From assembly GCA_964035545.1 (NCBI GenBank), contig OZ037769.1, forward strand, positions 15,344,633 through 15,408,632: a stretch of 64,000 nt of DNA, written 5' to 3'. Shown piece by piece: positions 19,306 through 63,946 of this stretch. Within the stretch, counting starts at the first letter, position 1; each line of letters opens with the position of its first letter. Made by a program: the position numbers and the translations under genes. This stretch comes from Bugula neritina (Eukaryota > Animalia > Bryozoa). The notes beneath the pieces were generated by a model. It was not told the origin of the DNA, did no database searches, and worked only from the letters and a program-made list of their open reading frames with translations.

Positions 19306-22300
19306 ATGGGTTGCGGAGGTTCTACGGCGGCTGGAGATCCTAAGAGTGGGGGCTCCTCCAAGGGAGCCTATAAATGTAAGTCTCTACAGTATTTTGTTAT
19401 GTCTGATTCTGACTGTATAGTAGGAGCTAGTTTCTTATCCTTCAACTTTTGCTTATCAACTGAACTATTTGCCTGTAGATTAAAAATTGATCAACACATG
19501 CAGATATGAAATGTAAACAACCTTTCATCTGAATTTAAGATTTTTAGCCACTTTGTGTTAGAATGAGGTGTTTTGGAATTTTTAATTTCAACTAGATTTG
19601 ACTTTAGAAATATTAGCATTACCTCCCATGTACAGCGTAGGTAGGTTATAGAGAAGAGCGTTTGCAGCAGTAAATATCTGATTGTTAGGGATCTGTTTTA
19701 TTATTGCTTTATTTGCATCACTTTGTTACTTACTTTAAGGCATGGCATTACATTTCTACCAAAGCTGATATACAAGATACATCTAATTTGAATTTGAGAT
19801 ATTAAAAAATAATAAATTGCCCATTTTTGAAGCAGCAGCTTGTATTTCGACTAAGCAAACTGTAAGTCTATATACTTACAATTTAAAACCATTAGCAATA
19901 AAAAACTGGAACATTTTTTTCAAAGTGTCAGGTTTTTCGCTTTTCAGGCCATATTATTTGTACGTTGGCAATAACAGCAGTAGGTTAGTTAATCTTCATC
20001 CAGTAGTATAGTTTGTGGTACACAATGTTGCCAGTAAAATCCACCACTGACTTAACGTCAGAGCAGGTATAATAATAGTTTATACTTCTAAATGTAATGC
20101 TCTTTGGCCTTATTCAACAATCTCCTTTGTAAACCTCGAGATATATTGTCTCAAAGAAATGTCAATGTTAAAATTTAATAGCCAAACATCAATACTTTTG
20201 TGTCTTTGTAACGCAAGCTTTTAGTTTCTGTATAAAGAAAGCTTTCAGTGCTGCTATAGTGTATAGCTGTGTGTAACTTGGAAGATATTTATTAGCTTGT
20301 GTTTACTGAGTAACTTTAGCTGTCACTGTTTTATGTACAGCTGCCATTAGTTTCAACTGGCAATAATTAGCTGCCATTTTAAAACCTACATACCTACCTA
20401 TATATGTATATGTATATATGTATATATTGTATGCACACACTAAATAAGTTTCTACCAATATTAATCAATTTGTTTAATTTTTTGTAGCTGATGGAAAGTA
20501 AGTATAACCAATTGTTTTAGTGTCAACCCTAACCAAGCACTACCTTTGTATTTCTAAAACACTATAGTTTTTATTTGTTTGTGCCTTAATCCCTGCTTGA
20601 TCCTTTGTAACCTTTCTAATTTAGGTACATCTAAAATCAAATGTCAAATAGAGGCCCAAAATCTAAATCAGTATTCTGTAACTTAAAATAAGCTTAAAAA
20701 AAATTCTTAAAGAAGAAGGATTGGAATGAGCAGATGTTTGAGTTTTAGGTATTGAAATATTAGCAGACTAAGATTATGTAACTGGGACCGTGTTTTCTCT
20801 TGTTATAGTTACTCAACTGCTCTCTATTGAATTGATATGATATCGATTTGCCTTTAACAATGAATCATTGTTTCTCAATTGATAAAACTACTCAGTTTGT
20901 GTAAATAGCAAATAAATATTCTGGTATTGGCATGATTTAAAAATCAATAGACGTTAGATACAAGTTGGTCAACTGATTCTGATTGTCTTGGTGCACATGT
21001 AACCTAACAAAGTTGAATTATGCCGTTTAGCTTGACTGCCATTTGAATCACTTTTGTTCTCTTTAGCGTGTCTAATGATTTTTTTCAATTTGCTTCTATG
21101 AGTCTTTTGTTTATTTTGTTGTAATGCTGTGTGGTGAGTCTTTAGGTAGGAGCTTTTCATGCAAAGTTTTCAGCCAATGACAACGTTGAAGAATAAAGTT
21201 GTACAAATTCTCTAAAACTGTTTTGACTTCAAGTTAAATAGTTGTCATAAACATTTATTTAGTAAACAAACTAATTATAATTAATTGTAAAAAATATTAA
21301 AAAAGGTTTTTCTTCATATAGAAATGAAGCGGTAGAGCTTTTCATTGGTCCATAGTACATTACCTGGACTTCAGTTGAAGATTATCTGTCAGGCATTTTC
21401 TTTAGAGTTTAAAAACATGAAAATTAGTGTCTATGTAAACTCTTTATAACTGTGTGTCTTCTAGCTAACATAAATTTAATATAACAAATTTAAGTACACA
21501 AAGGAACAAATTACAAACCTATTTGAATTTTAAGCTCCTATAGAATTTCTTTGGAATAACAAATATTTTTAGCATATGGTGTGTGTGTAGAAATTTAGCT
21601 AATAATTTTTTGCAGTAATTTAGGCAGCCTATAATTTATTCGAGAGCAGCTGTATAACAAAGATGATAAATTCCTAAAAAGGACCCGAGGTTTTTTTCTT
21701 AGTAAAAGTTATGTTAGCACTTAAAGCATTACTTCAAGAATTAACTGAACCATGGTCATTCTTAGAGATGCTAGCATGAAAATATATGTCTTAGACTTGT
21801 GAATCAATTCCCAGTAGACCCATTAGGGGTGCCCTGGAGAGCACCCAGACATAATTATTGTTTTACAGTCACTCAAACTACTGTATGTTGTCAGCTCTCA
21901 TAAAAACATGTAACATTAGAGTCCTTGCAAAACCATGGCTGCGAAAGAGTTTAACCACACTGCCACACTGCTGTAGTATGGTATTATATACTTTTTGTTG
22001 ACACATATAAAAGATCATCACTCTTGAATTAAGAAATATTGCAGCAGTTCCAATATGTGCTTTTTATCACACCTATTGATTTTCTGCTTTTGAAATTTTA
22101 CTATTCAACCTGTGATACTCCAAATTAAAAGGCATGCATGTTGGAGCTGCCAGTGTTCTATAACATAATAGGCACATTCTTAGTTAGTGAGCTGCTTCAC
22201 AGTCAAATATGCTTCGTGTTTCTGGGTTTAAATAGCCTATAGTACACGTCTGTGGTGTTTTCTAAAGGATCGATGGGTATCCAAACCTGGAAGGCCACAC

Positions 22301-25300
22301 CCACATCCTGTCTAGGAATCTCACTCCAGCTCTCTACAACAAGCTGAAAGATCTGAAGACAAACAGTGGCTGTACTCTAGACTACTGTATGAGAGGCGGA
22401 ATGAACAACCCTAACTTCTCCGTCGGTATGTTCACTGCATGACTCAAATCACTTTACCCAAAGCAACAAGGCTAACTTTTCTGAAAAAAAAATTTCTGGA
22501 GCTGTAAGTCACATATATTGTTTTGTTCATCAAAGTTGGACAATTCTAAATTATATAAATAATATAAAAGTTTTATTTAAGCGATAGCTCTAAATGGCAA
22601 ATTAAATTAAATTTTTATTCCTTATGAAAAGATAATTGTACTTAATCTCTAAAGTATAAATCTCAGTCGGTCTTTAAATAGAAAAGATAACTTCCCTTAT
22701 TCTCCTTGTTTGTCATCTTTAATACTTCTTTGTATCATTGTTTTAAATTTATAAAAAAACAGTGGCTAAATGATGGCACATAAATTTCTTTTTATAATAC
22801 TTTAAGTTGTAAAACTTTAACATATCTAGTTTTTAGTACGCAGAAAGTACCTAATTTCAATTACTGGGCTCTAATTTAGTTTTTTAAACTATTACATACA
22901 CTTCTACAAGATTTTAGTAAATTACACCATAAGAAATAATTCGAGCATTTTGTTACTGCTTATAGGTGTTACAATGGGAGATGAAGAATCTTACACTCTG
23001 TTCGGAGATGTGCTGTTTGGTGTCATTGAAGACAGACATGTTGGGTTCAAGAGAACTGACATCCATAAGAGAGATCTTGACTTCTCTAAGCTGGAGGGAG
23101 GAGATCTTGACCCCAACTATGTCCTTTCTAGTAGAGTAAGCTTATGACTATTGATATGTGTGATGAACTCACAAATTGTTGGTTATTATCAACTGTATAT
23201 ATTGCCATGTGAAGCCTATTGTAGTGCAGTACAATGACTGCCATGTGTCTGCATGGTTTTATATTCAAATAGAATGCTTTATAGAAAGATTTGTAATTTT
23301 TCTTTACTTGAGATAAGACTGTCAGAAATAGAAGCTGTGGTCAAGTCTAACATTGCAAATGTTGTGGAAGAATTTTTCATTGTATTCAAGCTGACAAATA
23401 AATTTACAGAATAGAAAATGTAACTTTCCATTATGTAACTTTTAGTCAGTGAGTAAGCTCACTGACTAAAAGTTACATAATGGAAAGTTAGGCAGGTCAT
23501 TTTAGAACAAATAATGAGTTGCTTGAAATTCTCCCACCTTTACAAATCCTTTTTTTTAAAACACAAGCTAAAATATAGCATAAGTTTTGTACATAAAGTT
23601 TAGTAGAGAGCATGTATTGTATTTGGCATTTAACCTTTAATTAACCTTTAAATTTTCTCTGCCACACGCAGGTTAGAACCGGCAGAAACATCAGAGGGTA
23701 CTCTTTGCCTCCGTTCTGTACTAGAGGAGAAAGACGAGATGTCAAGAACATTCTACTAGATGCTTTGAGCAACCTAGAGGCTCCATTCAAAGTTGGTCAT
23801 CTCTTGAAATTATGTTTTGTGAAGTTGTTACCAGTATTGTCTTTATTTTGCAAAAAAAGTGAAAAGAGAAGTACGTAACAAAATATTACAGTGGCTACGC
23901 ACAAGCATTGAAAGCTTTTGCCAAAGTTTCCTTTTTAAGATAACCTCTAAATGTGGAACACACAGAAGGAAGCACTTTAATCTTTCTAAAGTTTATTTCT
24001 TAGATTGCTGAACTTTTGATAAACTACTTGCCATTAGAATTAAAGATTTACTCAACTCTAAGAACAAAATATCGCTCTGTTGGTTGCATTATTCCAGGGC
24101 ACATTTTACTCTCTGGAGACAATGACCCCCGAGGATCAGCAACAACTTATCGATGACCACTTCCTGTTTGAGAAACCAACTGATACTTTTATGACAGACA
24201 CAGGTGAGTTCGAAGCTTTTAGTAAATGAGACTTTTCAAGTCACACCACTTAAGGCTGGTTTTAATACGATAGTCTCAAGTTTCCTGTCATCGATTGTAA
24301 GCCAGTACTTTTTATTAGGCATGGCACGTGACTGGCCAGACGCCAGAGGTATTTACCACAATGACGACAAGAACTTTCTGGTGTGGATCAATGAAGAAGA
24401 TCATAGCAGAATCATTTCTATGCAGAAAGGAGGGAACATAAAAGAGGTGGGTACACATTTTTTACAGCCAAACCTAATCGGTTTCCATGCAGTAGTCTCT
24501 AATTCTCTTTCCGTATAAGTGATAGTTTTCACTTTGCTTTCAGTTAACAAAAAAACGTCGGCTAATGTTTGGATTTTAGGTCTTTGAAAGATTCTGCACT
24601 GGGATCACTCAAGTTGAGAAGCTGATGGCGGACCAGGGAGGAAATGAGTTTATGTTCAATAAACACATTGGATATGTCCTCACCTGTCCCTCCAACCTTG
24701 GCACTGGACTCAGAGGTGGAGTCCATGTTAAGATCCCTAAACTGTCTGAACATCCCAAGTGAGTGATTGTAGATTGTATAGCTCCTACTATGTATGTGCA
24801 TTAATTTAAATTATGTGATGTAGTGATAGTATGTGAATACTTTTTGCTAGATCAATTAATAAACATTAGTACTTTAGGTTCTTTGCAAATTGCTATTGTT
24901 TTATTCCCTGTCAGGTTTGACGAGATACTGAAGAACTGTCGTCTGCAGAAGCGAGGAACTGGTGGTGAAACAACTACCAGCACAGACGGTACATTTGATA
25001 TCTCCAACTGGGACAGAGTTGGTAAAACTGAAGTAGAACTGGTACAGCTTGTTATTGACGGTGTGGAACTTCTTATCAAGATGGAGAAGAGGCTAGAGAA
25101 TGGTATATTATAAAGTCTCAGTTCTGCACATAACATTGATATCCTTAGCACTGTATGAAATGATAATCTTTGAGTTATTTTCAACTTATAGGTGAAAGCA
25201 TTGATGACATAATTCCAGGACCAGAGGGTGCCTGCCCTCGACCAAAAGCAGAAGGAGCTACCATAGAAGTTGTAAGTATTGTCAATCACTGTTGGTAAAT

Positions 25301-28300
25301 CATGATTGTAGTAACACAAGTAAAATCCTCATAATGTTTGACTGCTCCTAATTTCTAGACAGCTGTCCATGACCACACTTGGAGGGCTACTCCAAAGTCT
25401 AGCAGCTTCCCCAAGCTAGAAAAGCACCACAACATCCTGTCCACCAAGCTCACAGAAGCTGCGTACGACAGCGTTTCTGGCAAGACCACCAAGAATGGAG
25501 TCACTCTGGACATGTGCATTCAATCAGGTCAGTTTTATAGAGAGCAGCCGTTGTCTAGGGGTTAGAGCGCTGGTTTAGTAAACATGAAAGTCATCGATTC
25601 AATACCCATTACAGGCTATTAGTGATGTTAGGATACATATAAAACATAAGTTCTTAGTTTGCTTCAAAAACCTTTCCTTATTAGGGGTCTTTTACAGGAA
25701 TAGTAACTATAAACTTGCGTGAGTGAATTTAGTTCTATACGCAGTTCTCAAAATGGAAAAACTAAACCAAGAGACAGGAATTTTATATAAGACCTAATAA
25801 AGAAGGGCGAGGCATATTTGTAGCTCATGTTTATTTGCATGCAGGTTGTGACAACATGGGTGAAGAGGGCAAGGTAGACGCTGGTATCTTAGCCGGTGAT
25901 GAAGAATCTTATACTGAGTTCGCCGACATCTTTGATCCAATCATCTCGGAGCTGCACAGTGAATACGCAAAGGTATACATTGCATCGAGCATTTGTGACT
26001 TGTATAGCAATGAAAGAATAGAGATTGTTTATAATTTCTTTATCAAGTGTTGGTATCAGATTTAATGCTAGTAGCAAGGTATTAGTGCTGGTAGATTATA
26101 CAATTTATCGATATGTATTTTTCAATTATAGGGCACTCACCAAGAATATCCTCCTAATTAACAGCTACTAGTTATATTCAGCAGCACAACTCACATGCTA
26201 TTGACTAATTTTTGTCTTCGACGGTTTTAAACATTTGCCTACTCTGTACAGAATAATTCAACACGTAAAAATGTTGATTTTGCTAACTTTAAGTTTTTGG
26301 ATTTTCGTTTGAATTTCAGGCTCAAAATACGATAACTTTAGTTTGAGGGCAGATAACTCTAGTTTGAGGGCAGATAACTCTAGTTTAGGGGCAGATAACT
26401 TCCGCAGCCAAAGGCTTTGGGCTTCTAGTTATAGGTAGCATTGCTTTATTTTAGGGTGGCAAGCAGACCTGCGATATGGATGCCTCTAAACTCGCCAACT
26501 GTGAGCTCGATGGTGACTACGCAGTTGGGTGCAGAATCAGTGTCTCCAGAAACATCGCAGGGTTCAGACTGACGCCCTGTATAGACAGGTGTGAGAGGAG
26601 AATGGTTCAGAAGGCTATAGTAGACGCAGCCATGGCAATGGATAGCAAGGTATGGTGTCTTGCAGTATATTTATATAAAGCATTATATTACTCTGTTTTA
26701 TAACTATTATTAATACATTATTTGTTTATATTTCTATCTGCTTTCATATGCAATTAAATAAGGTTTAAGTTATATTCAGTCAACTGTATCTTCATTCAAC
26801 TTTATGCATTACTTTATTGTAATTATTATATAACATAATATGTTGCAATATTTGTGATATATTTGTAATATTTGCAATATTTTGTAATATAATATAATAT
26901 AATACGACACATTAAAATATATTGCAACATAATATAGGCTTCCATATATATACAAATGCTGCATGACTAAGCCTAGGGCCACACGGTGCGTATTTTCGCA
27001 TGCGAAAATTGAAATCACAAGTAGCAAAGGTGTCCACTGTGCGCGTTGAGAAAACGTTCGCACTTGCGTTGAAAATGCTGAGCGACAAGTGCGAATTGTC
27101 TCTGTCATCGTCACCTAATTGGCTGGTAGCTGTTCAGCGAGCCCAATTTCTTTATTTAGTGCTACATTCCAGCAAATTGCGTTCTATTGAAAGCGAGTGC
27201 GATTTAAAAATGAAAGCTTTATTTATCACGCATCACTGACGCTACAGTCGACACCTTTGCTACTTGTGATTTCAATTTTCGCATGCGAAAATACGCACCG
27301 TGTGGCCCAAGGCTAACTTTCAGAGGTTAAAGGTCAGTAAGAAAAGGCAACTCTGAATAGTAGTAATTATATTTATTAACTTTGTTCCATATTATATTAT
27401 ATTGTAATATATTTTAATGTGTTGTATTGTATTATATTATGTTATATTATATTATATTACAAAATATTGCATAATATTACAATGCATTATATTGTATCAT
27501 ATTATACTAAATTATATTATAATATATTATGTTATGTTATAGATTATTGTAATGTAGTTCACTCTATTCTAATATATTTATATACAATGTTATATAAATT
27601 AACATAGCAAAGTATGTGCATAGTAAAAGCTATATTCTATATTTTCTGCTATAAAAATGTAAATTTTGTTATTAATGGAAATTTTTATTTCAACTTTTAG
27701 AAAAAAAATTAGCGTGATATTTTTATATCAGCATTTTTATTTACTCTATTGCAAATAGCGCACTGCAGAAATTCAATGTAAGCTGAGATCTTACTATTAG
27801 TGCTTTTCTTGTAGGGCAAGTACACTACAGTACACGGTATGAGTGAAGAACAGAAGGCTCAGCCTATCATGTTTAGCAATATTGCTGACGTCTCTCTCAA
27901 ATGTGGCGGTGAGTAACTTTATCTACTCTACTCTACTTGTTGCTGATAATGTAAGCTTTCCATTTATAAGTCTGATTTTATCTCAACCATCTGGTGTCTC
28001 CAGGTGTGGACAGAGACTGGCCAGATGCGAGAGGAGTCTTCTGCTCTGGTGGAACCGACTTTGTCGTGTGGGTCAATGAAGAAGATCACTGTCACGCCTT
28101 TACGATGCAAGAGAGTGGAAACTTGAAGGCTGTAAGTATCTCCGTGAGGTCACTGGTCTTGTCCTTTTCTCAAACAGAATGTTATGTCTTTAGAGCACCA
28201 ATCCTATTAGCTCTTGTCAAAGATTGGTTGTGTAAAATAATTGCCCCCACTGGGATTCGAACCTGAGTCATCCGGCTTGCAAGCAGGCGCGTTAACCATT

Positions 28301-29784
28301 ACACCACCAAGACTCAACACTACAGTTTGAATAATTTCTTGGTAATGAATATTTACTCAGGTCTAATCTTTGTTACTCTGACTATATATTGTTAATATTC
28401 TGTAGGTTTTTGAAAAGTTCTGTGGCAATCTGCAAAAGCTCGAAGCTGGAATAAAGAAGAGTGGAAAGGGATTCATGCACAGTGACAAGCTAGGTTACAT
28501 CACTGCTAGCCCAGATAAACTCGGAACTTGTCTTAAAGTCGGGGTTCGAGCTAAATTACCCAAAGTATCTGCACATGACAAATTTGCCGATGTAAGTGTT
28601 TGCATAGCATTGGCAGCATTTTTGTAGTTTCGTATGACTTTTCTATAGCAGCTGGTAATTAGAACATTTTGATGTATTTCCTGTCTGTTTACTGCTCCCC
28701 AAGTGTAAGACACATAATACCGACTTTGTAATTTAATTGTTTATATAAAATTAATTGAAAATCTCATGAAAATGCCAATGCACTTGCTAACATAGGATGA
28801 AGCCCATGCTCAATTTCTTTAAAAGGATTCTATTGTGAGTTATTCAACTAACCAGTAGCTCTGCAGAGTCTTAGGCAAGTTTTTGGGTTTTAGATTACAT
28901 TGCGTTTTGTTTGAATGACTTTTGTACTGCCGCGTGAATTATTTTGGCCAAGTTTGTTCTGAACTTCATCAACTAAAATAGCTACACAACAAGATATGAC
29001 CATGACATATGAGATCACATGACATGATGTGACATGACATAACGTGATGTGATATGAAAAGTTCATCTACTGCTTGCAGAGTTAATTTTGGACTATTTTA
29101 CAGATTCTGGCAGCTCTGAGTCTAAACCTAGTAGCCAACAATGAAGGAGTCTGTGATGTAGCAAGCAAGAGCACCTTTGGCTGCTCAGAGGTAAAGTTCT
29201 TATAAAGTTCTTTTAATTAGGAATTTCTTTTAAAGTTATTTCTAACCTGAAAATAATACTTACCAAGACGCTCACACATACTATTTAGCTATCAGACAAA
29301 GAAGTACGACTACTGTAATCTATATTCTTGGTGCTTTTGTAACTGATTTCAATGGTTTCACATGAAAAAGCTTAATACAGCTTTAGCTTAGGATTGTGTC
29401 TGCATAACTTCGGTTCTATCATTTTCAAGTTGATCCGTATTCTGTAAACTTGTCACTTATTTCAAGTAGAGAATAGTCTATACAGCAATCTGATTAGATT
29501 TCATCTTCATGCAGGTTGAATTAGTTCAACACGTTGGAGATTGCATCAGTCATCTAATCAAGATGGAGAAAGCACTATCAGCCGGAGAGAGTGTAGATGA
29601 GCTGGCAGCGCAAGCTTTGTCTGGCGACGTCAAACCTAAAGAGGCTCCAAAAGAGGAGCCGAAAGAGGAAGCACCAGCAGCAGAAAAACCAGCCGACGAG
29701 GAACCAAAGGCAGAAGCAGCAGCTGAAAAACCAGCTGAGGAAGAGCCGAAGGCGGAGGGCAGTGAAGAGCCTAAAACAGAGTAA
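19306..29784 (+). CDS. PK1: two-domain phosphagen (ATP:guanido) kinase, creatine-kinase branch, with N-terminal MGCGGS acylation motif and acidic C-terminal tail, ~821 aa
   Basis: Exons: 19306-19375, 20488-20497, 22268-22425, 22966-23135, 23672-23791, 24098-24203, 24319-24446, 24580-24758, 24915-25102, 25192-25271, 25359-25527, 25845-25972, 26455-26649, 27815-27908, 28004-28131, 28406-28591, 29104-29190, 29515-29784. Total 2466 nt, all GT-AG, phases consistent. D1 motifs: [55 protein letters not shown]. Confidence 0.92.
20488..20497 (+). CDS. 10-nt microexon of PK1 (CTGATGGAAA)
   Basis: Context TTTTTTGTAG|CTGATGGAAA|GTAAGT. Converts the phase-1 end of exon 1 into the phase 2 required by the exon at 22268. 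Confidence 0.75.
23421..23490. repeat. Perfect 33-bp inverted repeat with a 4-nt loop (70-nt hairpin) in a PK1 intron
   Basis: TAACTTTCCATTATGTAACTTTTAGTCAGTGAG-TAAG-CTCACTGACTAAAAGTTACATAATGGAAAGTTA. Confidence 0.95.
25543..25616 (+). mobile_element. Degenerate tRNA-like SINE head
   Basis: A-box-like TTGTCTAGGGG and B-box-like GATTCAATACC at tRNA-like spacing; no intact cloverleaf. Confidence 0.35.
26332..26400. repeat. 21-bp tandem repeat (GATAACTCTAGTTTGAGGGCA), ~3.5 copies
   Basis: Directly visible. Confidence 0.85.
26971..27313. mobile_element. PIF/Harbinger-type MITE, ~343 bp, TAA target-site duplication
   Basis: TAA|GCCTAGGGCCACACGGTGCGTATTTTCGCATGCGAAAATTGAAATCACAAGTAGCAAAGGTGTC...GACACCTTTGCTACTTGTGATTTCAATTTTCGCATGCGAAAATACGCACCGTGTGGCCCAAGGC|TAA; TIRs over 60 bp and nearly perfect. 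Confidence 0.88.
28242..28313 (-). pseudogene. tRNA-derived SINE head or tRNA pseudogene
   Basis: Minus strand GTCTTGGTGGTGTAATGGTTAACGCGCCTGCTTGCAAGCCGGATGACTCAGGTTCGAATCCCAGTGGGGGCA. Clear A box (TGGTGTAATGG) and B box (GGTTCGAATCC), but imperfect acceptor and anticodon stems. Confidence 0.6.
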
Positions 29785-29965
29785 CTCTGACTATACAGGT
29801 TAGTAAATGTCCCGTGAGTGACTGTGACTATACAGGTTAGTAAGTGTTACTATGACTAACTGTGACTATACAGGTTAGTAAGTGTCACTGTGAGTCTAAC
29901 TGTGAGTAGCTCTGACTAGAAAAATAATTGCAACTGTTAGTAGCTGTGACTATGCAGGTTAGTAT
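29785..29965. repeat. Degenerate repeat (TGACTATACAGGTTAGTAA) after the PK1 stop, reiterating a probable 3'UTR splice donor
   Basis: Four CAG|GTTAGT copies; candidate acceptor TTTTATTTACAG ending at 30112 and AATAAA at 30142. Confidence 0.6.
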
Positions 29966-30269: not shown

Positions 30270-30305
<36 letters not shown>

Positions 30306-51183: not shown

Positions 51184-53590
51184 GTGATGTGTGTTTAGAT
51201 TCTGACCATCTGATTGGCTGCTACTTAACTAATCACCAATCTGATTGGCTAACTCCAGCTACAGAAATTTCCTTGAACAAGTCTCTTCTAGTCCAGCTAA
51301 TTTATTAGTAGAGATGGTGGCAGTGGTTGCAAATATCTTGTTCTGTTATTCAAGCATTACCATTGGTTAAAGCGTTTTCACCACTTTACATGTCATATCT
51401 TTCTCTGCAGCTGTAGTCTGTTATTTTTCTCAAACAATAAAATATTATCAAGTGCAACCCTTTCTATATTGTATATGCCCACACATTACACACGTAGGGT
51501 GCACAACTCCAATATAATTTCTAAAGTATATATTTTCAAGTATCAAAACTTTTTGCAGGAATTAAAGTGGAGCTTCTTAGCTCTACACAAATAATTTGCA
51601 TGTTTCTAGTGTTGTGTAGGGGCTTCATTCCGCCCTCCCATAATTATTAGAAAAGTTCTGCACTAAGCTATGTGCAGCAATGCAGAACTGGCTGTTCATT
51701 AGAAATGAGACTAATGAGTGCATAAGGCTCACTAAAACTCGCACGTAATAAAAGTAATATTCAAGATAATAAAATAATTACAAGATAAATATTGATATAT
51801 TAATAGATAGTAGATTGTGGGTGTGAAAGAAGGCTGTGTTTATAAATAAACATGGTGTCAAACTGCTCTGACAATATAATTCTATTTACACTTCCAGAGT
51901 CTATATAAACTATAAATTAGCTGAAGCACTGCTTTTTTCTTCATTACATATTGTTTGTGTTCATATATGACTGCTAATGCAGATTGCCCCTATGCCTGCC
52001 CGCACAAGCTAGGATTGGGCTGTTCTTGTATAGATTCTACTGGGTCGAAATGCTGCAAAAAGTAATTACCATCTAATTGGTTGGCTACTATTTAACAACT
52101 CATTTTTCAGTTTTATATTGATTATCTCATTAAATTGCTCATTCGTGGAACTAGCAGTTGTTGTGTTTTAAATGTATAGAAATATTTATTGTCGAAGACT
52201 GAAAGAAAATAGCAATGTGGAAAAGGTTATATCGTAAGCTATAAGTTGCAAGTTACAAGTGTGAGACGCAAGAGTGTGGATAAGTGAAAATTTTTGGGTT
52301 TTTATACCAGTCAAAAAGGTTAGCTTTTGTGTAGTAGCTATTATGAATGTGGAAAAAAGCATAATATAGCTGGTCTAGCTGAGATGATATGTGAAAAGCT
52401 ATCATGCATTAGGTAAAAGCTTTTCCAGCTTATGCAAAGTCCCAACAGCAGTAATATCACAAAATTAAATAGTTTATAATCAAGCAATCATGGACAATTA
52501 TTTCGGGCAGGTAACTCCCATACGTCCTATCTTATGCCCTGGTAATAACTTATATTTGTACAGTAAGTTGTAAATGCAACTAGCATCTATAATGCAACTA
52601 CAGGATGGAAATATTTCCAGCAACACCTCAAAAGCCTATTTCGAGGGGCTTGTATATCATAAAGTAATGGACTTTCGTTTTCCTCATTATAGTATTAACT
52701 ATCAATTAGTATAACCATGAGGTGATCATCTATCCAGTATTAAGTATTAATTAGCCTATGTTTGCATGCATAGGTAGGCATGATTACATAATATTATGAG
52801 AGCAATCAAATCTAATTTCAGAGCTGCAGGTAAAATATAGGTTTAATCTTTGGCTCATCATTAAACCTTTATAGGGGATTCCAAAAAGATTGCATGTGTT
52901 CTGTTCTAACATGCTCGTATAATTTTGCAATTATTCTTACATTCTGTCATGGGGTTTAAACTGCTATATTCTGTATAATTTATTATAGAATGCAACCACA
53001 CATATTTTTGTTTAAGTGTCTTTGAGAAACGTTACTTTTCAGCAGTTTACCTATTAGTGCTTGGAAAAGATGCATAAGACCTTTGGATAGAATATTATTG
53101 TTTTCAAGCTGCTTCAACTAAGTTTAGATTGTGAACTAATAGTTACAAATGATACCTCAGAATAGAAACTTTCTCACTAAAAGGCTAGTTTAAACATAAC
53201 CGATGCACTACTTAGATAGACTACTACTTACTACTAACACCTTTAATAATGCGATATCTTACGTCTGCATGGTACCAGCATGCAAACTAATTATATACAA
53301 CATGCTGCAGCATATAGAAAGTTGTGAATACCTTCTCTAATACGCATAACCTTTATAATCAATAAAATCAATTGTTCGCTCGTGGCTTAACAAATATACT
53401 TCACAATGGAATGAATTGTTTACAGCTTGCCGATGACCAAGAGCTTGCCAATCGGCTTCTACAACGATTTATAGCAATTCACCGGCAGCATTACTGAGTG
53501 TTTAGTTGATCAGCTGAGTGTGTGGTTGATGTCAGAATGATAACAGGTGTAGCTCTGATTGTACAGACAGTGAGGAGTTACTACAGAAAG

Positions 53591-56500
53591 ATGAGCTCAG
53601 GCAGGTACGGCTAGTGAAGCTTGATGTGTTGATAGGACTTTATTGTGTCTTGAGTTATATTTATATTATGCTTTTTCAAATCTCTGCCAAAATTAATGAG
53701 GTGGGTGCAGTGAAGAAAAAATAGAGAAAGTCCTGGGTTCTAGATTAGAAATGTTGCAAAGGAAGTTATGAAACTTAAAGAACTTGGGCTATTAAAATTT
53801 CTCCTCTACTTCACCTAAATGTTGTGATTAGAGTTCATATTATATCCTATGTGTCTGCATGTTAAGTGTATAGTGTATAGAGATCATTTGAGTATTGCTG
53901 CGCTTCCAAGCTTCGAATCATGTAAATGGATTTTTCATTTGATGTTTGGGTTAGGAACAGTTGCATCTCATGAGAACACAACCATAAGTTAATGCAACTG
54001 CAACCACACACATATATCCCCATAATCCGAAGTAATACGCCCCCCCTCTCCCCCTACTGAATAGACAATTGTACGCTACTACTCTACTATGTTAGGGCTA
54101 TACTTGGGTATCCACTGCTATTTACTACATGGGGTATTCTGCTACACTCCTGTATAGTATATGTATGGGGTACTTTGCTACACTCTTGTATACAATGGAG
54201 TTTGCTAAGGGCACTACTGCATTAATTTATTGAACTCACTGTTTGCTTTTGCTGCAAGTTCAGGTATTGTAATTCAGGCAGCACGTAACGCTGCCTTTAG
54301 TTCAGGCGAAGTTGATTACTCTGTTGGTAACAACTTGCTTCCAACACAAGAGAAGATAAATCTACATACTCGTTTCAAGTTTTACCATCACTATAAAGTT
54401 GAAAAAACATTTTAGTAGATTAAAAAATAGCAAATGCATTGTGTTTCACATAGATTTAAAAATAAGTTTATATCATTTTTATATTACGAATTACTTTACC
54501 ATTTGCCATAACATAATAATGTAAAAAGTGTTCCATGTGTTTTATTAACCCTGAATCTATTTAACCCAGTGCTCCTATCTTCCTATACTAGCTCTATGCT
54601 ATTTTTAAAGACAACAGTTTACCAACAGAGCTCTGAATGCCTCTTGCATAGCAGCTACCAGAAAAGTTTTTTTTTGAGCAGCCATGTTGGAACATGGCAA
54701 CTGCTCTTTAAAAGTTTGAGTCTTATTTAAATCCAGTCTGCTTTACTAATGGCTCAATTATTTTGAAAAGCCTTTGATCATTTGTTTATCCCTAACAGTC
54801 TTGCTTCAAAAAGCTATAGTCATTATAGGTTTATAGTTCATTTAATAATTAAATGTATGCGTCTAATGACTGCCTAATGTTTTTAAATTATTTTCCCTCC
54901 TGTATTATATGCTCTGACATTCGCGGAGTGAAACATTTAATTACTGCTGCAAGTAGGTTCTGCTATTAACTAATTACAAGCAATGTTAATGAGTTTGTAT
55001 TTATCTCATGGGAAATGTGGATGAAATTTCTCCCACCCTTTCAAAAACCGAGCCACTTCTGCAGCTTGTTAGACTGCTACATTGTAACCAACTTGGAATA
55101 CTCATGCATACAGAATAAGTACAGACAAACTCCAGAAGGAAATCATCACATTTGCTGCTGCTCGCTACTTCCTGTTGATGCCTTAGAAGAATTTCTCTCT
55201 GTAGCTTAGTTACTGAGTTCATAGTACTTGCTTTGTATAGTATACTTAGCTTAGCTTAGTGCGCATTTTACCAACTCCTTCACAACTTTCCAATAAAAGC
55301 TGTAATATATTTTTCGTTTTGGGGTTAAAACTTCTAAATCCATGCAATATTTTCTTTTTAATTTTAAATATTTTTATGTTATCAACGTTATATATATTAT
55401 GTAGTTGTTTATTTGCAGCTTTTTTACTTGATTTAAGTCAAAAAAATTGATAAAATTCTATCGGTCAATTTCCCATTAGTTCCACAATAATAAATTTGAT
55501 ATTAGCATTTCAAGCTGACATTATATAATGTCAAGCCAATGTCTAAGTACACAGAATCTTGTCTGTAATATTGCCAGTTAACTTTTCCTTCTTTATTTTA
55601 TTTTCAATAATGCGTTGTTGACATTCAGAAAAATAAATAAGCTGTAATTTATAGCTATAATATATACTATGCAGACATTGGACTTCTCTTAACATTGTTC
55701 TGTGACTCTATAAACCTTTTTGTGATTGGCTAGTTTTGCTAATTCATGCGTGTGATATAACATTACATATATGACATATTATGTTATATTATAATATATT
55801 ACATAACGAGGTATTACATGACATATTATTGATCAATGAAAAGGACATTGTGCTGGAAATCTAGACAATTCTCAGACTATGTAATCTCTTTAGTTGGGGA
55901 GGTATTTTATTGATCTGCATTCAACTGTGTCTAGATAAGCTGTACCCTAATCGGTTTAAAGTTTATTATTAAATTAAAATTATAGCCAAAATTTAATAAT
56001 AATTCTCAAACAATAGTTTGTATGGAAGCAAAGCAGTGAAGCTAGGCGAAATTTATTAGTACACTATGTAGATAACCTAAGTGCAGTATTGAATGGAAGA
56101 TATTATCTCTTCGGCAAAAAAATATTATGTTTACTTTTTTTCTTTATACGAAGAGTTTGAGCTATAAAGGAGTTTCTGGCAAGCAGCAGTTTATAGGTGT
56201 TGGTTCCCATTAGGTTACGTGCTGTTTGTACTACTCTCTGATATTATTTGGCATTTCCAAAATATTGAAGTAATATTATATTATTATTTCCTGCAGCTTG
56301 CTCTATTATATAACAGAATTAAATTATTACTCTACATGCGTTCTATTGGATCCATTATAGGCATCAGCTGCTTGAATACCATCAGTGGTGGATGAAAATC
56401 TGTGTACCCAACTTAGAGGGGGAATTTTAAATCAGAAACAATAAAAAATAGAGCAGTGATAAATAGCTGCCATTTTTATTTATTTCTTAAAAAATTAAAA

Positions 56501-59500
56501 CTTATTTTGTTTTCCTTTTCGACAAATATAATGCAAACTATACATATTTGTGCTGATGCTGTTGCAAGAGTAACCCCCAAGTTTGTAATTATTTGGCTAC
56601 ACCTAATAGGTTAAAAATAGAAAGCTGTTAAGCACACAAATATATATCCACGTAATATAACCTTTAATATTCACTTTCATACCTGCAGCCAGAGGGTTTA
56701 AACAAACTCTTTTTTCTTTCACCACTTAGCCACAGCTACTAGTAGAATTCAAAATGTCCGGTAACAGGTTTGTACTTTAGATTATGTTTTATAGATTTTA
56801 GTATGCAATAAGTTTATGGGTTGCCTAATTGAATTTTATTTCGTTATAGCAAATATAATCATTTATATTAATATTACTTAAAATATTTAATAGAGTAAGA
56901 AAAAGTATTATAATACACCATTTAATTTAAAACATAGTATGGGTATTTATGTAAAAAAATTAAAAATTTTAAAAAAGTTACTAAAATTTGTAGCATTTTA
57001 ATGTAGAAATCACTATCAAAGCTGCACTTTCTATTATTCAATTACTGGCTGTTTAGACTTTCCCGTTATTTTTATGTTCCCCTCCAAGAGTTGACAACTG
57101 CTAGCTCAAACTACTTTATTAATACATAGCCATATGCATAAATGAGAGAGGATAACCCTTATTGGAATATAATCATTGTAATCATTTTAAAAACTGCGTT
57201 TTCTATGTAGCTGTGCTTAGAATATTTTCATTTCTCATTTATTGTAGAATTTAAACTGTGCTGCCAATTTAAAAGCACTATTTTGTTTGGATCACCAAAA
57301 CTAGGTGATCAAATATAGAGCTAGATAGTACAATCTAGAGCTAGGTGGTGCATTGCAAAGCTATAGGTAGTGCAATGCAAAGCTAGGTGGTACAATATAG
57401 CTATGCTTTGACTTTAGGAACAGAACCATGTAATGTAATTTTTATTAAGGTTGTAATTGGCTTTTTATGACTACTGTATAGCAGCAAACTAATAAATGTA
57501 CTCATAAAATCTAATGCAATGTTATATAACAAGTGCTTAGTTATTATATATTATATACCGAGCACATTACTGCCACGGCCTTGCCTTATAAGCTTAACAT
57601 TATTCAGAAATTATTATTATTCAACTATAACTCCTTTCATATCTTAGAATATTATGCACCCACACACTGCATAGCCTGTGGCCTCACTCACTAACTTACT
57701 GCATAGCCTGTAGTCTGCATAGCTTGTAATCTCACTTGTCAACTCATGTATTACATAACATTGTTTGAATTCAATAACCACTTTAACAACTGGTATTGTT
57801 ACCTCCTTATATACACCTTTTCACTTAGTATAAAGTCCCTGCATTTCATTGGTCAATGCCACACAATAGTTTCACCGGTAGACCAGAATTCTTTGCAAAC
57901 TTTACCGGCATCTTTGCTCAGTTGCACTCATTTGTTGACTGCTGCCTGGTGTGTAATTTGCTGACTCTGCATCTAAACCGCTGCTTCTAAATAATCACAA
58001 TGTCTTCAGGAGGGTATGTGTCCTACTATAATATCCTTCTAATACTTACCTTGTAACATGTTGTATATGTTATTAAGTAGACCTTGCGTATATCTTGTAT
58101 TATTTACTACATATAAAAATTATAAAGCAATTTGCAAACTTTTAGTTGTAAGATTTTTGGCAAAAGTTTTTACTATAACATTTTGGTACTGATGTGTTGG
58201 CTGTGCAAGAATTTAGTAAACACATTTAGCCTACTCTCTGGAATATTATGCTGCAAGTACACATGCACTTGGGTTCTTTGGTTATTTAACAGAACTGGAT
58301 AACATCTTGAATGGTCTATTAAGTGCAGCATATATGTTGTGGCTATCAAACCATCATATTATACTCAAAACATCAGGGCTTTAGGTCTTCCATCCACTTG
58401 TTCGTTATGTTCATATTAATATTTCTCTCCTAAACTATTAGGATAAAAATACTGGACTGAATATCTCATTATTTAAAATAAAATACTGTTTACTAAATTA
58501 TTTAATATATTTGAGGATAATGATGTAGGTGCAAACATTTCACCTTGTAGGCTTATGTGCAGCAAGCTCACACCATTGGCTAAAATATCCTTTATACCTG
58601 CTAGGGTGCGAGTTTATGCCTTGCTGCATCCCAGCTAATGTAGTGCAAGCAGTAGAAATAGAGAAACACAATGAAATTAACTCTGCAGTTATGTGCTCCA
58701 TAATAGTTAGGCTAGCATTTGCTAAGCTTATTCAAAGCTTGAAGGCTTGTTTATGTTCTTTTAGGAACAACAGACTTCGAATTAAATCAATTTATTGAAC
58801 CCAATCAATATTTAAAAAGCCTTAATGTTACATTTCAGTGAATACAGTACACCCAAACAATACACCAGCCTTAATGTCATTCACACTTGCAGTTTAGAAA
58901 ACTTAAATCTAAGTTATACTTTTTTTACATTAAATCTTCATGACTACATAGTTTTATCAATCACCCAGTATTTTACTCGAAACTCATTTACAGTATCAAA
59001 TTTGTCTATAGGTAAAAATGTGGAGAATAATATTTTTATTTCCACACAATGCTTATATTTTATGCTATCTAAGTAAAAATAAGTAAAAAGAAAATGTATT
59101 TTATAATGTTTTATATTTTTCTAACTAGCTATGATATATAGATATGTTAACAGAATAGTGCTCTTATATTCATTATAGCGCCTTTTAAGGGAAATGATTA
59201 AATTAATTAAATAAAATTCTGTCCAAAACTATGGAAAGCTGCACAAAATTACATTATATGTTTTTAATAACATAAAGCCTTCTGTATTATTACAATATAT
59301 AACAACTATTATTGACATAACATGTTGTTTGTTTCTCTGTAGTTTTGACCGCTACCCCGACATGGAGGGCCACACCCACTTTGTCTCCAAGAATCTCACT
59401 CCTGAGATTTACGACAAGCTGAAGGACTTGAAGACAAAGAGTGGATACACCATTGACAAGTGCATTCAGGGGGGCATTGACAACCCCAAATTCTCTGTTG

Positions 59501-62500
59501 GTGAGTGTTCGGGTTTTTGTTCCTATGTTTATACTTTTACCATATTATAATCTTTCAGTTCCGATATTCGTATTCCCCACTATCACATGTGTCAATTAAA
59601 AGTGTCACATGTGTCAATTAAAAGTGTCACATGTGTCAATTAAAAGTGTCACATGTGTTCTTTTGCCAAAGTGTCACTTTTGTCATGCTTGTCAAAATGT
59701 CACTTTTGTCATGCTTGTCAAAGTGTCACTTTTGTTATGTTTGTCAAATGTGTCATATTGATCAATGTGACACACATGTCAAGTATGTTAAGATGGCACA
59801 TGTGTCATGTTTGTTAAAGTGGCACATGTGACATGTATGTTAAGGTGACACATGTCAAGTATGTTAAGGTGACACATGGGATATATTTGTTAGAGTGGCA
59901 AATGTGACATGTCTGTTAAGGTGACATATGTGCCATTTGTGTTAAGGTGACATGTGTGACATGTATGTTAAGGTGCTACTGGTGGAGATGAAGAGACTTA
60001 CACTCTCTTTGGTGATCTGATGTACGGCATTATCGAGGGAAGACATGTTGGTTTCAAGAGAACCGACATACATAAGAGTGACATGGATTCCAGCAAGCTG
60101 ATTGGTGGAGACCTTGACCCCAACTATGTCCTCTCTAGCAGAGTGAGTTCTTATATAGAGATCATTGAAATGAAATGGCATTCTTTTTGTCTCAACTGAA
60201 TGAGAATCATGGAGTTATCTGTTCATTGTAAAACTTGCCGGCTTATAGATTAGGATGTAAAATAGTAAGATGAAAAAATTAATTTAACGTAACTGAATCG
60301 GTATTAGGTACAAGTTGATTCAACACAATAGATTTCGGTTATTGTGTAGATTTATCAGTACAAACGAGATCTTTGTTTGTAGGTTCGAACCGGAAGAAGT
60401 ATTCGAGGATATTCTCTTTCTCCATTCATCACTCGGGCCGAAAGACGAGATGTCCAGGATATCCTTCTTAAGGCTCTGAGCAATCTGGAAGGACCTTTGA
60501 AGGTGAGAAGATAACTCTAATCTACAAGCAAGTTTTACAGTTAGTTATTCTGCCATTATTTTACACATGCATAATTTTCCAGGGCAAATTTTACTCCCTG
60601 GAGACAATGACCCCAAAGGATCAGCAACAACTTATTGATGACCACTTCCTGTTTGAGAAACCAACTGATACTTTTATGACGGACACAGGTGAGTTAGGAA
60701 CTTTTAATTGTTCAAGCCACACCACTTAATGCTGGGTCAACAATTGTAAGCACGATTACAATTATCTTCAGGTATGGCACGTGACTGGCCAGACGCCAGA
60801 GGTATTTACCACAATGACGACAAGAACTTTCTGGTGTGGATCAATGAAGAGGATCATAGCAGAATCATTTCTATGCAGAAAGGAGGAAACATCAAACAGG
60901 TGAATGGGACAGTTGGAGCAATAAGAATTACTCTTTTGTAAATATTTTAAAGGTTTTTATAGTGAATTTCCATGTGCAAAAATTAGCTTTATGTTGTCTT
61001 TAGGTCTTTGAAAGATTCTGTGCTGGAATCAACCAAGTTGAGAAGCTGATGGCTGAGCAGGGAGGAAATGAGTTCATGTTCAACGAGCATATCGGATACG
61101 TCCTGACCTGTCCCTCCAACCTGGGTACTGGACTCAGAGGTGGAGTTCATGTTAAGATCCCTAAACTGTCTGAACATCCCAAGTGAGTGATTGTGGAATG
61201 ATTGACTCTTGAGTTAATTTAAGTAATATAGCGAAAGCACACCTCATTCCAGATCAACTACACAAATTCATTGTCATTCTCATCTTTTGAAAATGTTGTA
61301 AACCTCTACTGTCAGGTTTGATGAGATTTTGAAGAACTGTCGTCTGCAGAAGAGAGGAACTGGTGGTGAGACAACTACCAGCACAGATGGTACATTTGAT
61401 ATCTCCAACTGGGACAGAGTTGGTAAAACTGAAGTAGAACTTGTACAGCTTGTTATTGACGGTGTGGAACTTCTTATCAAGATGGAGAAGAGACTGGAAA
61501 AAGGTAAGAGAAGCCATATTAAAACGCTATGGTTCACTGAGTTGATCAAAGTGATTCTGAATTTTGTTAAGAATTTACTTGTTATATATTCTATATTTAT
61601 TATTACAGGGGAGAGCATTGATGACATTCTTCCAGGACCTGATGGCGCATGCCCTCGTCCAAAGGCTCCTGGAAAAGCGCTAGATATAGTATGTACAGAG
61701 TCATGTTCATTCTAATCACTATTATATCATCTGTTATATACACTTCGTTTGGAGAAAACAACTTCTACTGTTCCTTTGGTATATCTAAATTACAGGCTAC
61801 AATAGCAAACAATATCATAGATTGCTATTTTTGTTGAATCTTTACAATAAAGGTGTTTTAGTCTTATTAACGTAGTTGATCATTCTGTATTAATGGATGC
61901 TTTATACGGACAACTGTAGAAAGCAATCCATGATTACAAATGGCGAGCAACTCCAAAAGCTAGCAACTTCCCTAAGCTACACAAACACAACAACCTCTTG
62001 GCAAAAGTTCTAACAGAGGAACTTTACAATGACCTCAAAGGCAAGGAGACAAAAGGCGGAGTAACTCTAGATGACTGTATTCAGACAGGTGAGTGTAAAA
62101 CCCATCCCCTCTCCTTCTAACTTATGTATGCAACGTGTGCTTTAACTATATGATACGGTGTGTCATATTGAGTGAGAGTCAGTCAAGTTAAGTCACAATG
62201 AGTCAAACTAAGTCAAAGTAAACCATAGTCAGTCACATTAAGTCAAAGTAAGTCACAATGAGTCAAATTAAGTCAAAGTAAACCATAGTCAGTCAAAATA
62301 AGTCCTGGCAAAACACAGGGAATCAAACTGATGCAAACTGAATCATATTATTACACTTCTGTAGGACACAAAACAAATCTGGTAAACAAAATATGAATCT
62401 ATAATTTAAAAAATGTAGCCTCAAATCTAAATCTTTACTTTCAGGCGTAGACAATTTAGGAGAAGCTGGGGCAGAGCCAGTGGGAGTAACAGCCGGAGAT

Positions 62501-63946
62501 GAGGAGTGTTTCAGCATGCTGTCTGCACTCTTTGACCCCGTAATTGCTGCCGCTGGTGGCAAGGTAGGTTTTAGCAGCAGTTTAGCTGTTCAGAGGCATT
62601 TACCAGGCTTTAACATGTAAGATAATTGAACTGTGGGCATTGTAATGATTTATTATATTTGAGCTTTTTACCAGCTCTTACTTCCAACAATTCTGTCACT
62701 ATGTAACTCATACAAACTTGCTTCTATCAACTCATGGATCAATCTTGTTTCTGCTGCATTAGGCCGGCAGCCATGTCAGTAGCTTAGACGGCAGCAAACT
62801 AGGCAGCACCGACTTTGACAAAGATCTAGTGGGCGATTGTCAAATCAGCGCTGGAAGGAATATCCGAGGTTTCCGTCTCTCACCATCCATTGACCGCGCG
62901 GAGAGACGCAATGTTGAGAAGATTGTGTCTGATGCTGCTGCCACTCTGGACGGCTCTCTCAAGGTCAGCTGATCACATTGTGTCTGTCACAAATACGACT
63001 AGCAAAGTGGGCACAACTCCTCAGTGTGTAATACTTGAACCTTTTGTCATATTATAGTGGTGCATTATTTTGGACATTGGCTTGTCAGATGATCGTTTTA
63101 GCTGGAGTTTAATGTAATATAGAGTTTGTTGATATTTTAGTAGGTCACACTGAAACATCATATATGTAAATGTATAAAGACATGTATTTTTAATCAACCT
63201 GTAATACGTAATCTTAGTCAGGAAAGTCTATAAATAAAGTATTTTAAAGAGTTTAACCGAAAACCCTCTGCTTACAGGGCAAATACCAGTCTTTGAAGAA
63301 CATGGGTGATGCTGATAAGAATAGACCAATCATGTTCCAGAAAATCTCCTGCCCTCATTTGCTTTCTGCAGGTTAGTTGAGTGTTTGGAAGTAGCCTATG
63401 GGGCGTTATAAGAAAACTGCAATATGGCTTTTTAATGCCGAAGGTCTCATTTTTAAATTAGCGTAACTCTATTTTTAATAAAATTAATTCAACAACTCAT
63501 TTAAAAGAGCTTTTTTAGCTTTAACTTAGAATTATTGAGTTCTCTTATTATGAAAAATCAGCAACTGAATAAATTAGCAAGTGCAACTGTATGCTATCAA
63601 CTTTTATTACCTTCACATCATTATACACGTTTATATAATATTTTGGTTATTGCACAAAATTGTCCTTGCTTGGCTGACATTTTATTGTTATATACACAAT
63701 GTCATCCACAATGTTTTACACAATGCCCTACACAACGTCCTAAGCATGACTATAACATAATTGAACGCAAACCCCATCATTAGCTGATACAATGACTGCT
63801 CCATTGTTACTATTTCTCAAACAGAAGTACGCAGAGACTGGCCTGATGCACGAGGTGCCTTCACCAACGACAGCAGCGACTTCGCTGTCTGGGCTAATGA
63901 GGTGGACCATGCTCGAGTGGTTGCCAGGGGACAAAGTCTCTCAGCT
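53591..63946 (+). CDS. PK3: third two-domain phosphagen kinase paralogue, 3'-truncated by the window end
   Basis: Candidate first exons 53591-53604, 56754-56767 or 58000-58013. Then 59343-59500, 59973-60142, 60383-60502, 60583-60688, 60772-60899, 61004-61182, 61316-61503, 61609-61688, 61920-62088, 62445-62563, 62763-62963, 63278-63371, 63825-63946. Same intron positions and phases as PK1 and PK2. Confidence 0.9.
53697..53822 (-). mobile_element. Family A element, copy 7 (inverted, internally deleted)
   Basis: TGAGGTGGGTGCAGTGAAGAAAAAATAGAGAAAG...TTAGAAATGT...AAAGAACTTGGGCTA...CCTAAATG. Confidence 0.6.
59583..59975. repeat. Degenerate, partly inverted repeat (TGTCACATGTGTCA / TATGTTAAGGTGACA) running into a PK3 splice acceptor
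   Basis: Directly visible; the last TATGTTAAG|GT unit is the acceptor required by the frame and exon size (59972). Confidence 0.8.
62176..62305. repeat. Degenerate ~10-bp-period repeat (AGTCAAAGTA-like)
   Basis: Directly visible. Confidence 0.75.

What the first reader, a model, noticed from the sequence alone, without database searches (positions are those of the whole stretch)
19306..63946. Candidate new system: tandem trio of kinase-plus-pseudokinase phosphagen kinases, each with a different addressing tag (membrane/cilium, peroxisome, probably cytosol)
Seen: three paralogues share the architecture intact D1 - conserved linker - degenerate D2 and the same internal intron positions, but differ in tiny terminal exons. 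PK1 begins MGCGGS, PK2 ends SKL*, and PK3 has short MSxx starts with no recognisable N-terminal signal (its C-terminus lies outside the window). Established: phosphagen shuttles rely on compartment-specific isoforms (mitochondrial, cytosolic, and the myristoylated three-domain flagellar CK), and trypanosomes have flagellar, glycosomal and cytosolic arginine kinases. Inference: this locus may encode an animal energy-buffering network with a peroxisomal arm, built from single-chain active/inactive pseudo-dimers. I do not recall this combination being described, but I cannot search to confirm.
Basis: partly seen in the sequence, partly recalled or inferred. Interest (0 to 1): 0.92.

Follow-up and report, generated by a model that had tools for sequence, protein, structure and literature searches.

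The report
Bryozoan energy kinases from flagellar enzyme
A moss animal (Bugula) has rebuilt the three-part creatine kinase of cilia and sperm tails into three neighbouring two-part enzymes (one working half, one dead but conserved half) that probably no longer use creatine and carry different address tags, including a peroxisome signal confirmed in RNA, which I found described for no animal enzyme of this family.

Summary
Three tandem genes each encode an intact phosphagen-kinase domain (D1) joined to a domain (D2) that has lost C283, R132, R292, H296 and the R320 loop, yet stays under purifying selection (dN/dS 0.04-0.10). RNA contigs from four studies splice PK2's last intron, so PK2 ends in SKL. 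PK1's MGCGGS start needs a 10-nt micro-exon (conserved, not RNA-tested). New here: intron positions, linker, termini and a tree show each gene is domain 1 plus domain 3 of a three-domain flagellar creatine kinase, with domain 2 lost. D1 lost the creatine determinants (4-residue GS-loop deletion, V325E); arginine is the likeliest substrate. Searches found only four phosphagen-kinase genes in the genome. The fourth, mitochondrial-type, looks catalytically dead. PK3 is not simply untagged: an RNA-spliced first exon adds an amphipathic, basic 18-residue extension. Localisation and activity are untested. No relative outside Bugula was found. Trypanosome arginine kinases are the functional precedent, so this is a new variant of a known kind. 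Earlier scan notes flagged the dead mitochondrial gene on another contig.

The parts
19306..19375 (+). PK1 first coding exon, [10 protein letters not shown]..., myristoylation (G2, S6) and palmitoylation (C3) type start
   Evidence: Sequence; 98% conserved in second lineage L007; matches flagellar CK starts such as P0250 MGCGSSKTAA. Splice not RNA-tested.
20488..20497 (+). PK1 10-nt micro-exon that restores phase (1 to 2) between exon 1 and D1
   Evidence: Best-scoring candidate; exon and both splice sites identical in L007.
22268..25102 (+). PK1 D1, intact catalytic domain, 7 exons
   Evidence: Exons 22268-22425, 22966-23135, 23672-23791, 24098-24203, 24319-24446, 24580-24758, 24915-25102; residues.
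25192..25271 (+). PK1 linker exon (remnant of the flagellar CK d1-d2 junction exon)
25359..29783 (+). PK1 D2 (degenerate, from flagellar CK domain 3) and E/K/P/A-rich acidic tail ending in a stop at about 29783
   Evidence: 8 exons; dN/dS 0.035 on exons 9-11; similar acidic tail in relative L028:11397-11489.
36622..36641 (+). PK2 candidate first coding exon (MSGTAAS, phase 2)
   Evidence: Best donor score upstream of PK2; an RNA contig leaves only about 96 nt upstream of exon 39424. Not directly shown.
39424..42684 (+). PK2 D1, intact catalytic domain, 7 exons
43871..43947 (+). PK2 linker exon
45099..51062 (+). PK2 D2 (degenerate), 8 exons
   Evidence: dN/dS 0.10 on exons 14-16
51063..51173 (+). 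PK2 last intron (111 nt, GT..AG); retention would give ...MSGR* without PTS1
   Evidence: Spliced in 4 of 4 runs; joint depth 5370/2863/644/15 versus about 6-10 for intron-containing contigs.
51174..51183 (+). PK2 last coding exon completing S-K-L-stop (PTS1)
   Evidence: identical in assembly GCA_010799875.2
51184..51457 (+). PK2 3' UTR to poly(A) site
   Evidence: poly(A) loose ends at 51457 in two runs
53537..53604 (+). PK3 first exon A: 18-residue amphipathic basic extension, then MSSG
   Evidence: Donor 53604 spliced to 59343 in runs X1 and X6; frame kept in second lineage, 3 synonymous and 2 non-synonymous changes; net +3, hydrophobic moment 1.21. Use of the upstream ATG is inferred.
56754..56767 (+). 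PK3 candidate first exon B (MSGNS)
   Evidence: conserved; no contig in the four runs laid
58000..58013 (+). PK3 candidate first exon C (MSSGG)
   Evidence: conserved; outside the stretch laid with reads
59343..61503 (+). PK3 D1, intact catalytic domain, 7 exons
   Evidence: dN/dS 0.009-0.017
61609..61688 (+). PK3 linker exon
61920..63946 (+). PK3 D2 (degenerate), first 5 exons; three more lie beyond the window (L001:1284-1469, 1933-2019, 2826-2950)
   Evidence: dN/dS 0.09; GenBank KAF6030020.1 'CKM' is this gene with different predicted termini

Best explanation
A three-domain flagellar creatine kinase gene lost its middle domain. Domain 1 stayed catalytic but switched away from creatine (most likely to arginine). 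Domain 3 lost catalysis and was kept as a structural partner, probably standing in for the second subunit of the normally dimeric CK fold. The two-domain gene was then triplicated in tandem, and the copies were re-addressed through small terminal exons. PK1 keeps the ancestral acylated N-terminus and acidic tail (cilia or membrane). PK2 gained a PTS1 and is at least partly peroxisomal. PK3 uses alternative first exons for a cytosolic form and possibly a mitochondrion- or membrane-associated form. Together they appear to supply the animal's working phosphagen buffer. Shown: gene structure, origin by introns, SKL splicing, D2 degeneration under selection. Inferred: substrate, localisation, pseudo-dimer role.
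For: D1 shares 6 of 7 internal introns with flagellar CK domain 1, three of them found in neither d2 nor d3. D2 shares 7 of 8 with domain 3, four of them found only there. None of the three d2-specific introns is present. The exon before D2 matches the d3 linker exon residue for residue in length and motif. Tree: D1 sister to flagellar d1 (100/91), D2 sister to d3 (99/93). The PK1 N-terminus and acidic tail match flagellar relatives. D1 lacks H66/I69 and has E at 325, as in AK and LK. D2 loses catalytic residues but keeps R148, R151, R152, R209, D210, W211, which I recall as the CK dimer interface; dN/dS 0.04-0.10. AlphaFold pTM 0.75 with a floppy linker suggests defined D1-D2 packing. SKL is spliced in 4 studies; PEX13 and a weak PEX14 hit are in the genome. 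No AK-lineage or canonical CK gene was found in the genome, yet arginine kinase is reported for B. neritina (ref. 176 of PMC6429109).
Against: AU tests on a smaller quick tree did not reject D1+D2 as one clade, D1 with LK, or D1 with AK (p 0.21-0.32), and D2 slid toward the outgroup there. One intron (209.1) is shared by D1 and D2 but by neither flagellar gene examined. D1 keeps the CK-type R96, where AK has Tyr and LK Lys, so the substrate is uncertain. No localisation or activity data exist. PK1 and PK2 5' joins are not RNA-tested. The two flagellar CK genes used come from unidentified metagenome animals.
Confidence: 0.6

Rival explanations
1. Origin and architecture as above, but the tags do little: the paralogues are tissue- or stage-specific, mostly cytosolic enzymes (for example PK2 as the bulk muscle enzyme), and SKL is incidental or gives only minor import.
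For: Chance SKL endings occur a few times per proteome (my estimate). Conservation of 3 codons at dS about 0.17 is weak evidence. I recall that the 2018 Mar Biol paper places B. neritina AK in neuromuscular tissue (not held). No peroxisomal phosphagen kinase is described in animals in the papers searched.
Against: SKL is the canonical PTS1 and is completed by a dedicated exon that is spliced more than 100-fold over retention. It replaces an ancestral acidic tail. The weaker SNL suffices for T. brucei AK2 (PMC3679164). Acylated MGC starts drive membrane binding of flagellar CK (PMC13024116).
Confidence: 0.25
2. D1 uses a non-arginine guanidine (taurocyamine, lombricine, glycocyamine or an unknown bryozoan phosphagen), as annelid CK-lineage enzymes do.
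For: The GS deletion plus E325 also fits LK and TK; the combination with R96 matches no classical enzyme.
Against: Those substrates need an amidinotransferase, and none was found (weak tests with recalled motifs and no good positive control). AK is the activity reported for this species.
Confidence: 0.25
3. D2 is not a dimer mimic but a regulatory or anchoring module (protein or metabolite binding), or it arose by internal duplication of D1 rather than from flagellar domain 3.
For: AU test p = 0.21 for D1+D2 as one clade; shared intron 209.1; D1 also keeps the interface residues, so D1-D1 dimers are possible.
Against: Four d3-specific introns and the d3 linker exon in D2, and three d1-specific introns in D1; D2 is closer to d3 (46-49%) than to D1 (37-40%).
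Confidence: 0.15

Closest known systems
Three-domain flagellar creatine kinase (sea urchin TCK and invertebrate relatives; here L028, L009, P0001, P0151)
   Same: Gene ancestry (introns, linker, tree), contiguous multi-domain chain, MGC-type acylated start and acidic tail in PK1.
   Different: Two domains instead of three, last domain catalytically dead, creatine determinants lost, three paralogues with different termini.
Trypanosoma brucei AK1-3 (PMC3679164)
   Same: Three close paralogues addressed to flagellum, peroxisome-type organelle (PTS1) and cytosol by short terminal sequences.
   Different: Single-domain AK-lineage enzymes in a protist with glycolytic glycosomes; localisation there is shown. 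Here CK-lineage, two-domain, animal, and only predicted.
Two-domain AK and TK (Anthopleura 4RF6, clams, Schistosoma 4WO8, Clonorchis TK)
   Same: Two phosphagen-kinase domains in one chain.
   Different: AK-lineage; both Clonorchis domains are active (PMC3836730). The predicted domain arrangement here does not superpose on 4RF6 or 4WO8 (TM 0.43-0.45).
CK-lineage enzymes with switched substrate (echinoderm dimeric AK 3JU5, annelid LK, GK, TK)
   Same: Short GS loop and Glu at 325; 52-59% identity and TM about 0.88 to D1.
   Different: Single-domain; residue 96 is Tyr, Lys, Ile or His rather than Arg; derived separately, since D1 groups with flagellar CK d1. GK, TK and echinoderm AK were not in my tree.
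GenBank KAF6030020.1 'CKM' [Bugula neritina]
   Same: Is PK3 from another assembly.
   Different: Automatic annotation as muscle CK; its first exon is not the one seen spliced in RNA, its last exon differs from my model, and there is no functional description.

Membership tests
ATP:guanido phosphotransferase (phosphagen kinase) | PF02807 + PF00217 domains and fold | tested here: met
ATP:guanido phosphotransferase (phosphagen kinase) | Catalytic set (R130, R132, NEED 230-233, R236, C283, S285, R292, H296, R320, D335) in D1 | tested here: met
ATP:guanido phosphotransferase (phosphagen kinase) | Same catalytic set in D2 | tested here: not met
   C283, S285, R132, R292, H296, R320 lost in all three D2
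Flagellar creatine kinase | Domain-specific intron pattern and linker | tested here: met
   6/7 with d1, 7/8 with d3
Flagellar creatine kinase | Three contiguous active domains | tested here: not met
   two domains, one degenerate
Flagellar creatine kinase | N-terminal myristoylation motif | tested here: inconclusive
   motif present on PK1's predicted first exon only; join conserved but not RNA-tested
Creatine kinase (EC 2.7.3.2) | Long GS loop with H66/I69 and V325 | tested here: not met
   4-residue deletion and E325
Creatine kinase (EC 2.7.3.2) | Arg at position 96 | tested here: met
   residue rule in PMC3836730
Classical arginine kinase | Short GS loop and Glu at the 325-equivalent | tested here: met
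   aligns without gap to Anthopleura AK GS loop
Classical arginine kinase | Tyr at the 96-equivalent | tested here: not met
   Arg
Classical arginine kinase | Placement in the AK lineage | tested here: not met
   41% to AK versus 62-73% to flagellar d1; tree; AU test alone inconclusive
Classical arginine kinase | Activity on L-arginine | not testable with these tools
   needs assay
Annelid LK/TK/GK | Lys, His or Ile at the 96-equivalent | tested here: not met
   Arg; LK-type sequences form a separate clade
Two-domain AK/TK (Anthopleura, trematodes) | Both domains catalytically equipped, AK-lineage | tested here: not met
PTS1 peroxisomal matrix protein (PK2) | C-terminal SKL in the mature transcript | tested here: met
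PTS1 peroxisomal matrix protein (PK2) | Import machinery in the genome | tested here: met
   PEX13 strong, PEX14 weak hit; PEX5 not searched
PTS1 peroxisomal matrix protein (PK2) | SKL-dependent peroxisomal localisation | not testable with these tools
   needs tagging or organelle proteomics

The most novel reading that the evidence does not exclude
Bugula has replaced the whole animal CK/AK system with one remodelled flagellar-CK locus. Single-chain kinase/pseudokinase enzymes using arginine serve cilia (PK1), the peroxisomal matrix (PK2, an animal peroxisomal ATP buffer not described before) and cytosol plus mitochondrial surface (PK3 isoforms), while the true mitochondrial CK orthologue survives only as a catalytically dead structural protein.
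Probability: 0.25. Interest if true: 0.82.

Novelty: new variant of a known kind. Interest (0 to 1): 0.62.

Why it matters
It would add an independent route from creatine kinase to a non-creatine enzyme, this time from the flagellar isoform, and a clean natural pseudoenzyme for asking why CK-lineage kinases need a partner subunit and what the repeats of flagellar CK do. If PK2 is imported, it offers a direct test of how animal peroxisomes buffer ATP, so far paralleled only in trypanosome glycosomes among the papers searched. It also corrects the public 'CKM' annotation and suggests which genes underlie the arginine kinase linked to larval settlement of this fouling species.

Tried and rejected
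Direct join of PK1 exon 1 to exon 22268: rejected, phases clash and give a stop. PK2 ending by intron retention: minor in RNA. D2 as decaying junk: rejected by dN/dS. Recent internal duplication: disfavoured by introns, not excluded by AU test. Searches for relatives in other species: exon query against 1.84 billion representatives, two exon-level homologue searches, a one-exon profile, metagenome scan and ESM Atlas gave only Bugula members; these tools have length and word limits, so this is not absence. For one search I aligned the three copies of exon 7 with a long stop-free repeat ORF of the window, only to set the length range. Single-sequence AlphaFold failed (pLDDT 36). Amidinotransferase search is inconclusive. 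Zhang et al. 2018 and two older papers were not held. Synteny in other species was not testable.
Full report
Source. The window lies on contig 5 of a 216-Mb animal genome. Near-identical loci come from JGI Bugula-symbiont records and from assembly GCA_010799875.2, where PK3 is annotated 'CKM [Bugula neritina]'. I therefore take it as the Bugula neritina complex (inference). Those loci are 82-86% identical overall, dS about 0.15-0.24, and serve as a conservation control.

Gene models. Three plus-strand genes (PK1 19306-29783, PK2 about 36622-51457, PK3 from about 53500 to 1.9 kb past the window end) translate without internal stops to 821, 759 and 766 residues, with introns at matching positions. 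PK1's MGCGGS exon ends in phase 1 and cannot join the phase-2 acceptor at 22268 directly. A 10-nt exon at 20488-20497 fixes this and is identical, with its splice sites, in the second lineage. It is not RNA-tested because the single read-laying run went to the PK2 end.

RNA evidence. On 50850-56849, contigs from four runs of four studies (RNA status is the tool's guess, but they are spliced and polyadenylated) all skip the 111-nt intron 51063-51173. Joint depths are 5370, 2863, 644 and 15, against about 6-10 for intron-containing contigs, and poly(A) begins at 51457. PK2 thus ends ...AMSGSKL*. The same call shows PK3's exon ending at 53604 spliced to 59343 in two runs. That exon has an in-frame upstream ATG (53537, purine at -3) adding 18 residues with no acidic residue, net +3 and a strong hydrophobic moment, kept in frame in the second lineage. 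Two further short first exons (56754, 58000) are conserved, but the first had no contig and the second lay outside the stretch. PK3 ends GKVKV* here and GKV* in the other assembly; a weak donor at that point leaves a further exon possible.

Active and dead halves. With muscle-CK numbering, D1 of all three keeps R130, R132, R135, H191, NEED, R236, C283, S285, R292, H296, R320, D335 and R341. Each D2 has lost R132, C283, S285, R292, H296, R320, R341 and the 320s loop; 27-34 of 80 otherwise invariant residues are changed. D2 is nevertheless under purifying selection, dN/dS 0.035-0.10. It keeps R148, R151, R152, R209, D210 and W211, which from my knowledge form the CK dimer interface. An alignment-based AlphaFold model of the GenBank PK3 protein folds both halves as kinase domains (pLDDT 81, pTM 0.75, disordered linker), in an arrangement unlike two-domain AK or TK crystals (TM 0.43-0.45). 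I could not inspect the coordinates, so the pseudo-dimer is an inference.

Origin. The best non-Bugula matches to D1 were genomic contigs of three-domain flagellar CK from unidentified animals (L009, L028). Mapping introns on one alignment: D1 shares 6 of 7 internal introns with flagellar domain 1, three of them absent from d2 and d3. D2 shares 7 of 8 with domain 3, four of them unique to d3. None of the three d2-specific introns appears. The exon opening D2 matches the d3 linker exon (K.LH.A[DE][YW].A..K...[FY]PKL), and the PK linker exon begins like the d1-d2 junction exon. A 66-domain IQ-TREE puts D1 with flagellar d1 (100/91) and D2 with d3 (99/93). AU tests on a smaller quick tree did not reject alternatives (p 0.21-0.32), so the introns carry the argument. 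PK1 keeps both ancestral ends: an MGC start like flagellar relatives (P0250, P0258) and an E/A/P-rich acidic tail like the predicted last exon of L028. Myristoylation drives membrane binding of sea urchin flagellar CK, a contiguous trimer (PMC13024116, PMC3080659).

Substrate. D1 lacks four GS-loop residues including H66 and I69, aligns without a gap to Anthopleura AK there, and has Glu for V325. These are non-creatine features. It keeps CK-type R96, where AK has Tyr, GK Ile, TK His and LK Lys (PMC3836730). Four searches of the genome found only PK1-3 and one gene on contig 4, with no AK-lineage or canonical CK gene (lower bounds). Arginine kinase is reported for B. neritina (ref. 176 of PMC6429109; paper not held). 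No amidinotransferase was detected, but these tests are weak. I put arginine at about 65%.

The fourth gene. The contig-4 gene has a mitochondrial-type presequence and falls among mitochondrial CKs on a long branch, but reads NERD for NEED and S for C283, so it looks dead as a kinase. That makes PK3's amphipathic extension a candidate replacement for the mitochondrial arm. This is speculative.

Comparison and novelty. Functionally the set resembles T. brucei AK1-3, addressed to flagellum, glycosome (PTS1 SNL) and cytosol (PMC3679164), but it is not related to them by descent within the family. By descent it is a flagellar CK derivative that fails the membership tests for CK and for classical AK. 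Paper searches found no animal peroxisomal phosphagen kinase, no bryozoan family description and no two-domain form with a dead domain; much of this literature is in journals not held, so that is not proof. No member outside Bugula was found, within the tools' limits.

Verdict. Each ingredient has a precedent somewhere, the combination does not appear to. Localisation and activity remain untested. New variant of a known kind; interest 0.62.

Noticed in passing
L003:4150-7765 minus (G000:C4 about 20585150-20588765): Intact 418-aa mitochondrial-CK-type gene with E232R, C283S, S285A, H191G and V325T: apparently a catalytically dead mitochondrial CK.
   Followed up: partly
window exons 5 and 7 of PK1, PK2, PK3 (e.g. 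24319-24446, 41632-41759, 60772-60899): 92-96% nucleotide identity between paralogues versus mostly 50-80% in other exons; exons 4 and 6 are 90-94% between PK1 and PK3. Suggests patchy gene conversion.
   Followed up: partly
window 53537-53604: PK3 exon A extension resembles in style short N-terminal outer-mitochondrial-membrane anchors such as that of hexokinase 1 (recalled, not tested).
   Followed up: partly
window 1940-2704 minus: LHFPL-family (PF10242) gene upstream.
   Followed up: partly
window about 7100-14200 minus: Multi-exon gene that looks SETD6-like by eye; exon-level Pfam scan did not confirm it.
   Followed up: partly
L001:4466 onward and L002, minus; L034:18220-18984: Dystroglycan-like gene (PF05454) directly downstream of PK3, tail to tail.
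   Followed up: no
window 47980-49400, 43950-44400, 18240-18500, 59600-59970: Long intronic or intergenic tandem repeats, many seeded on splice-site-adjacent sequence; the 47864-49405 frame stays open for 514 codons through one of them.
   Followed up: no
window 61504-61608: PK3 intron 7 is 105 nt, in frame and stop-free here, but not in the second lineage (P0002), so probably chance.
   Followed up: partly
L028 and L009: Three-domain flagellar CK genes from unidentified animals in metagenomes; the closest relatives found, worth identifying.
   Followed up: partly
run X12: A run labelled as a different organism holds a 2610-nt contig matching PK2's 3' end with few differences; possibly a mislabelled or mixed sample.
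   Followed up: no
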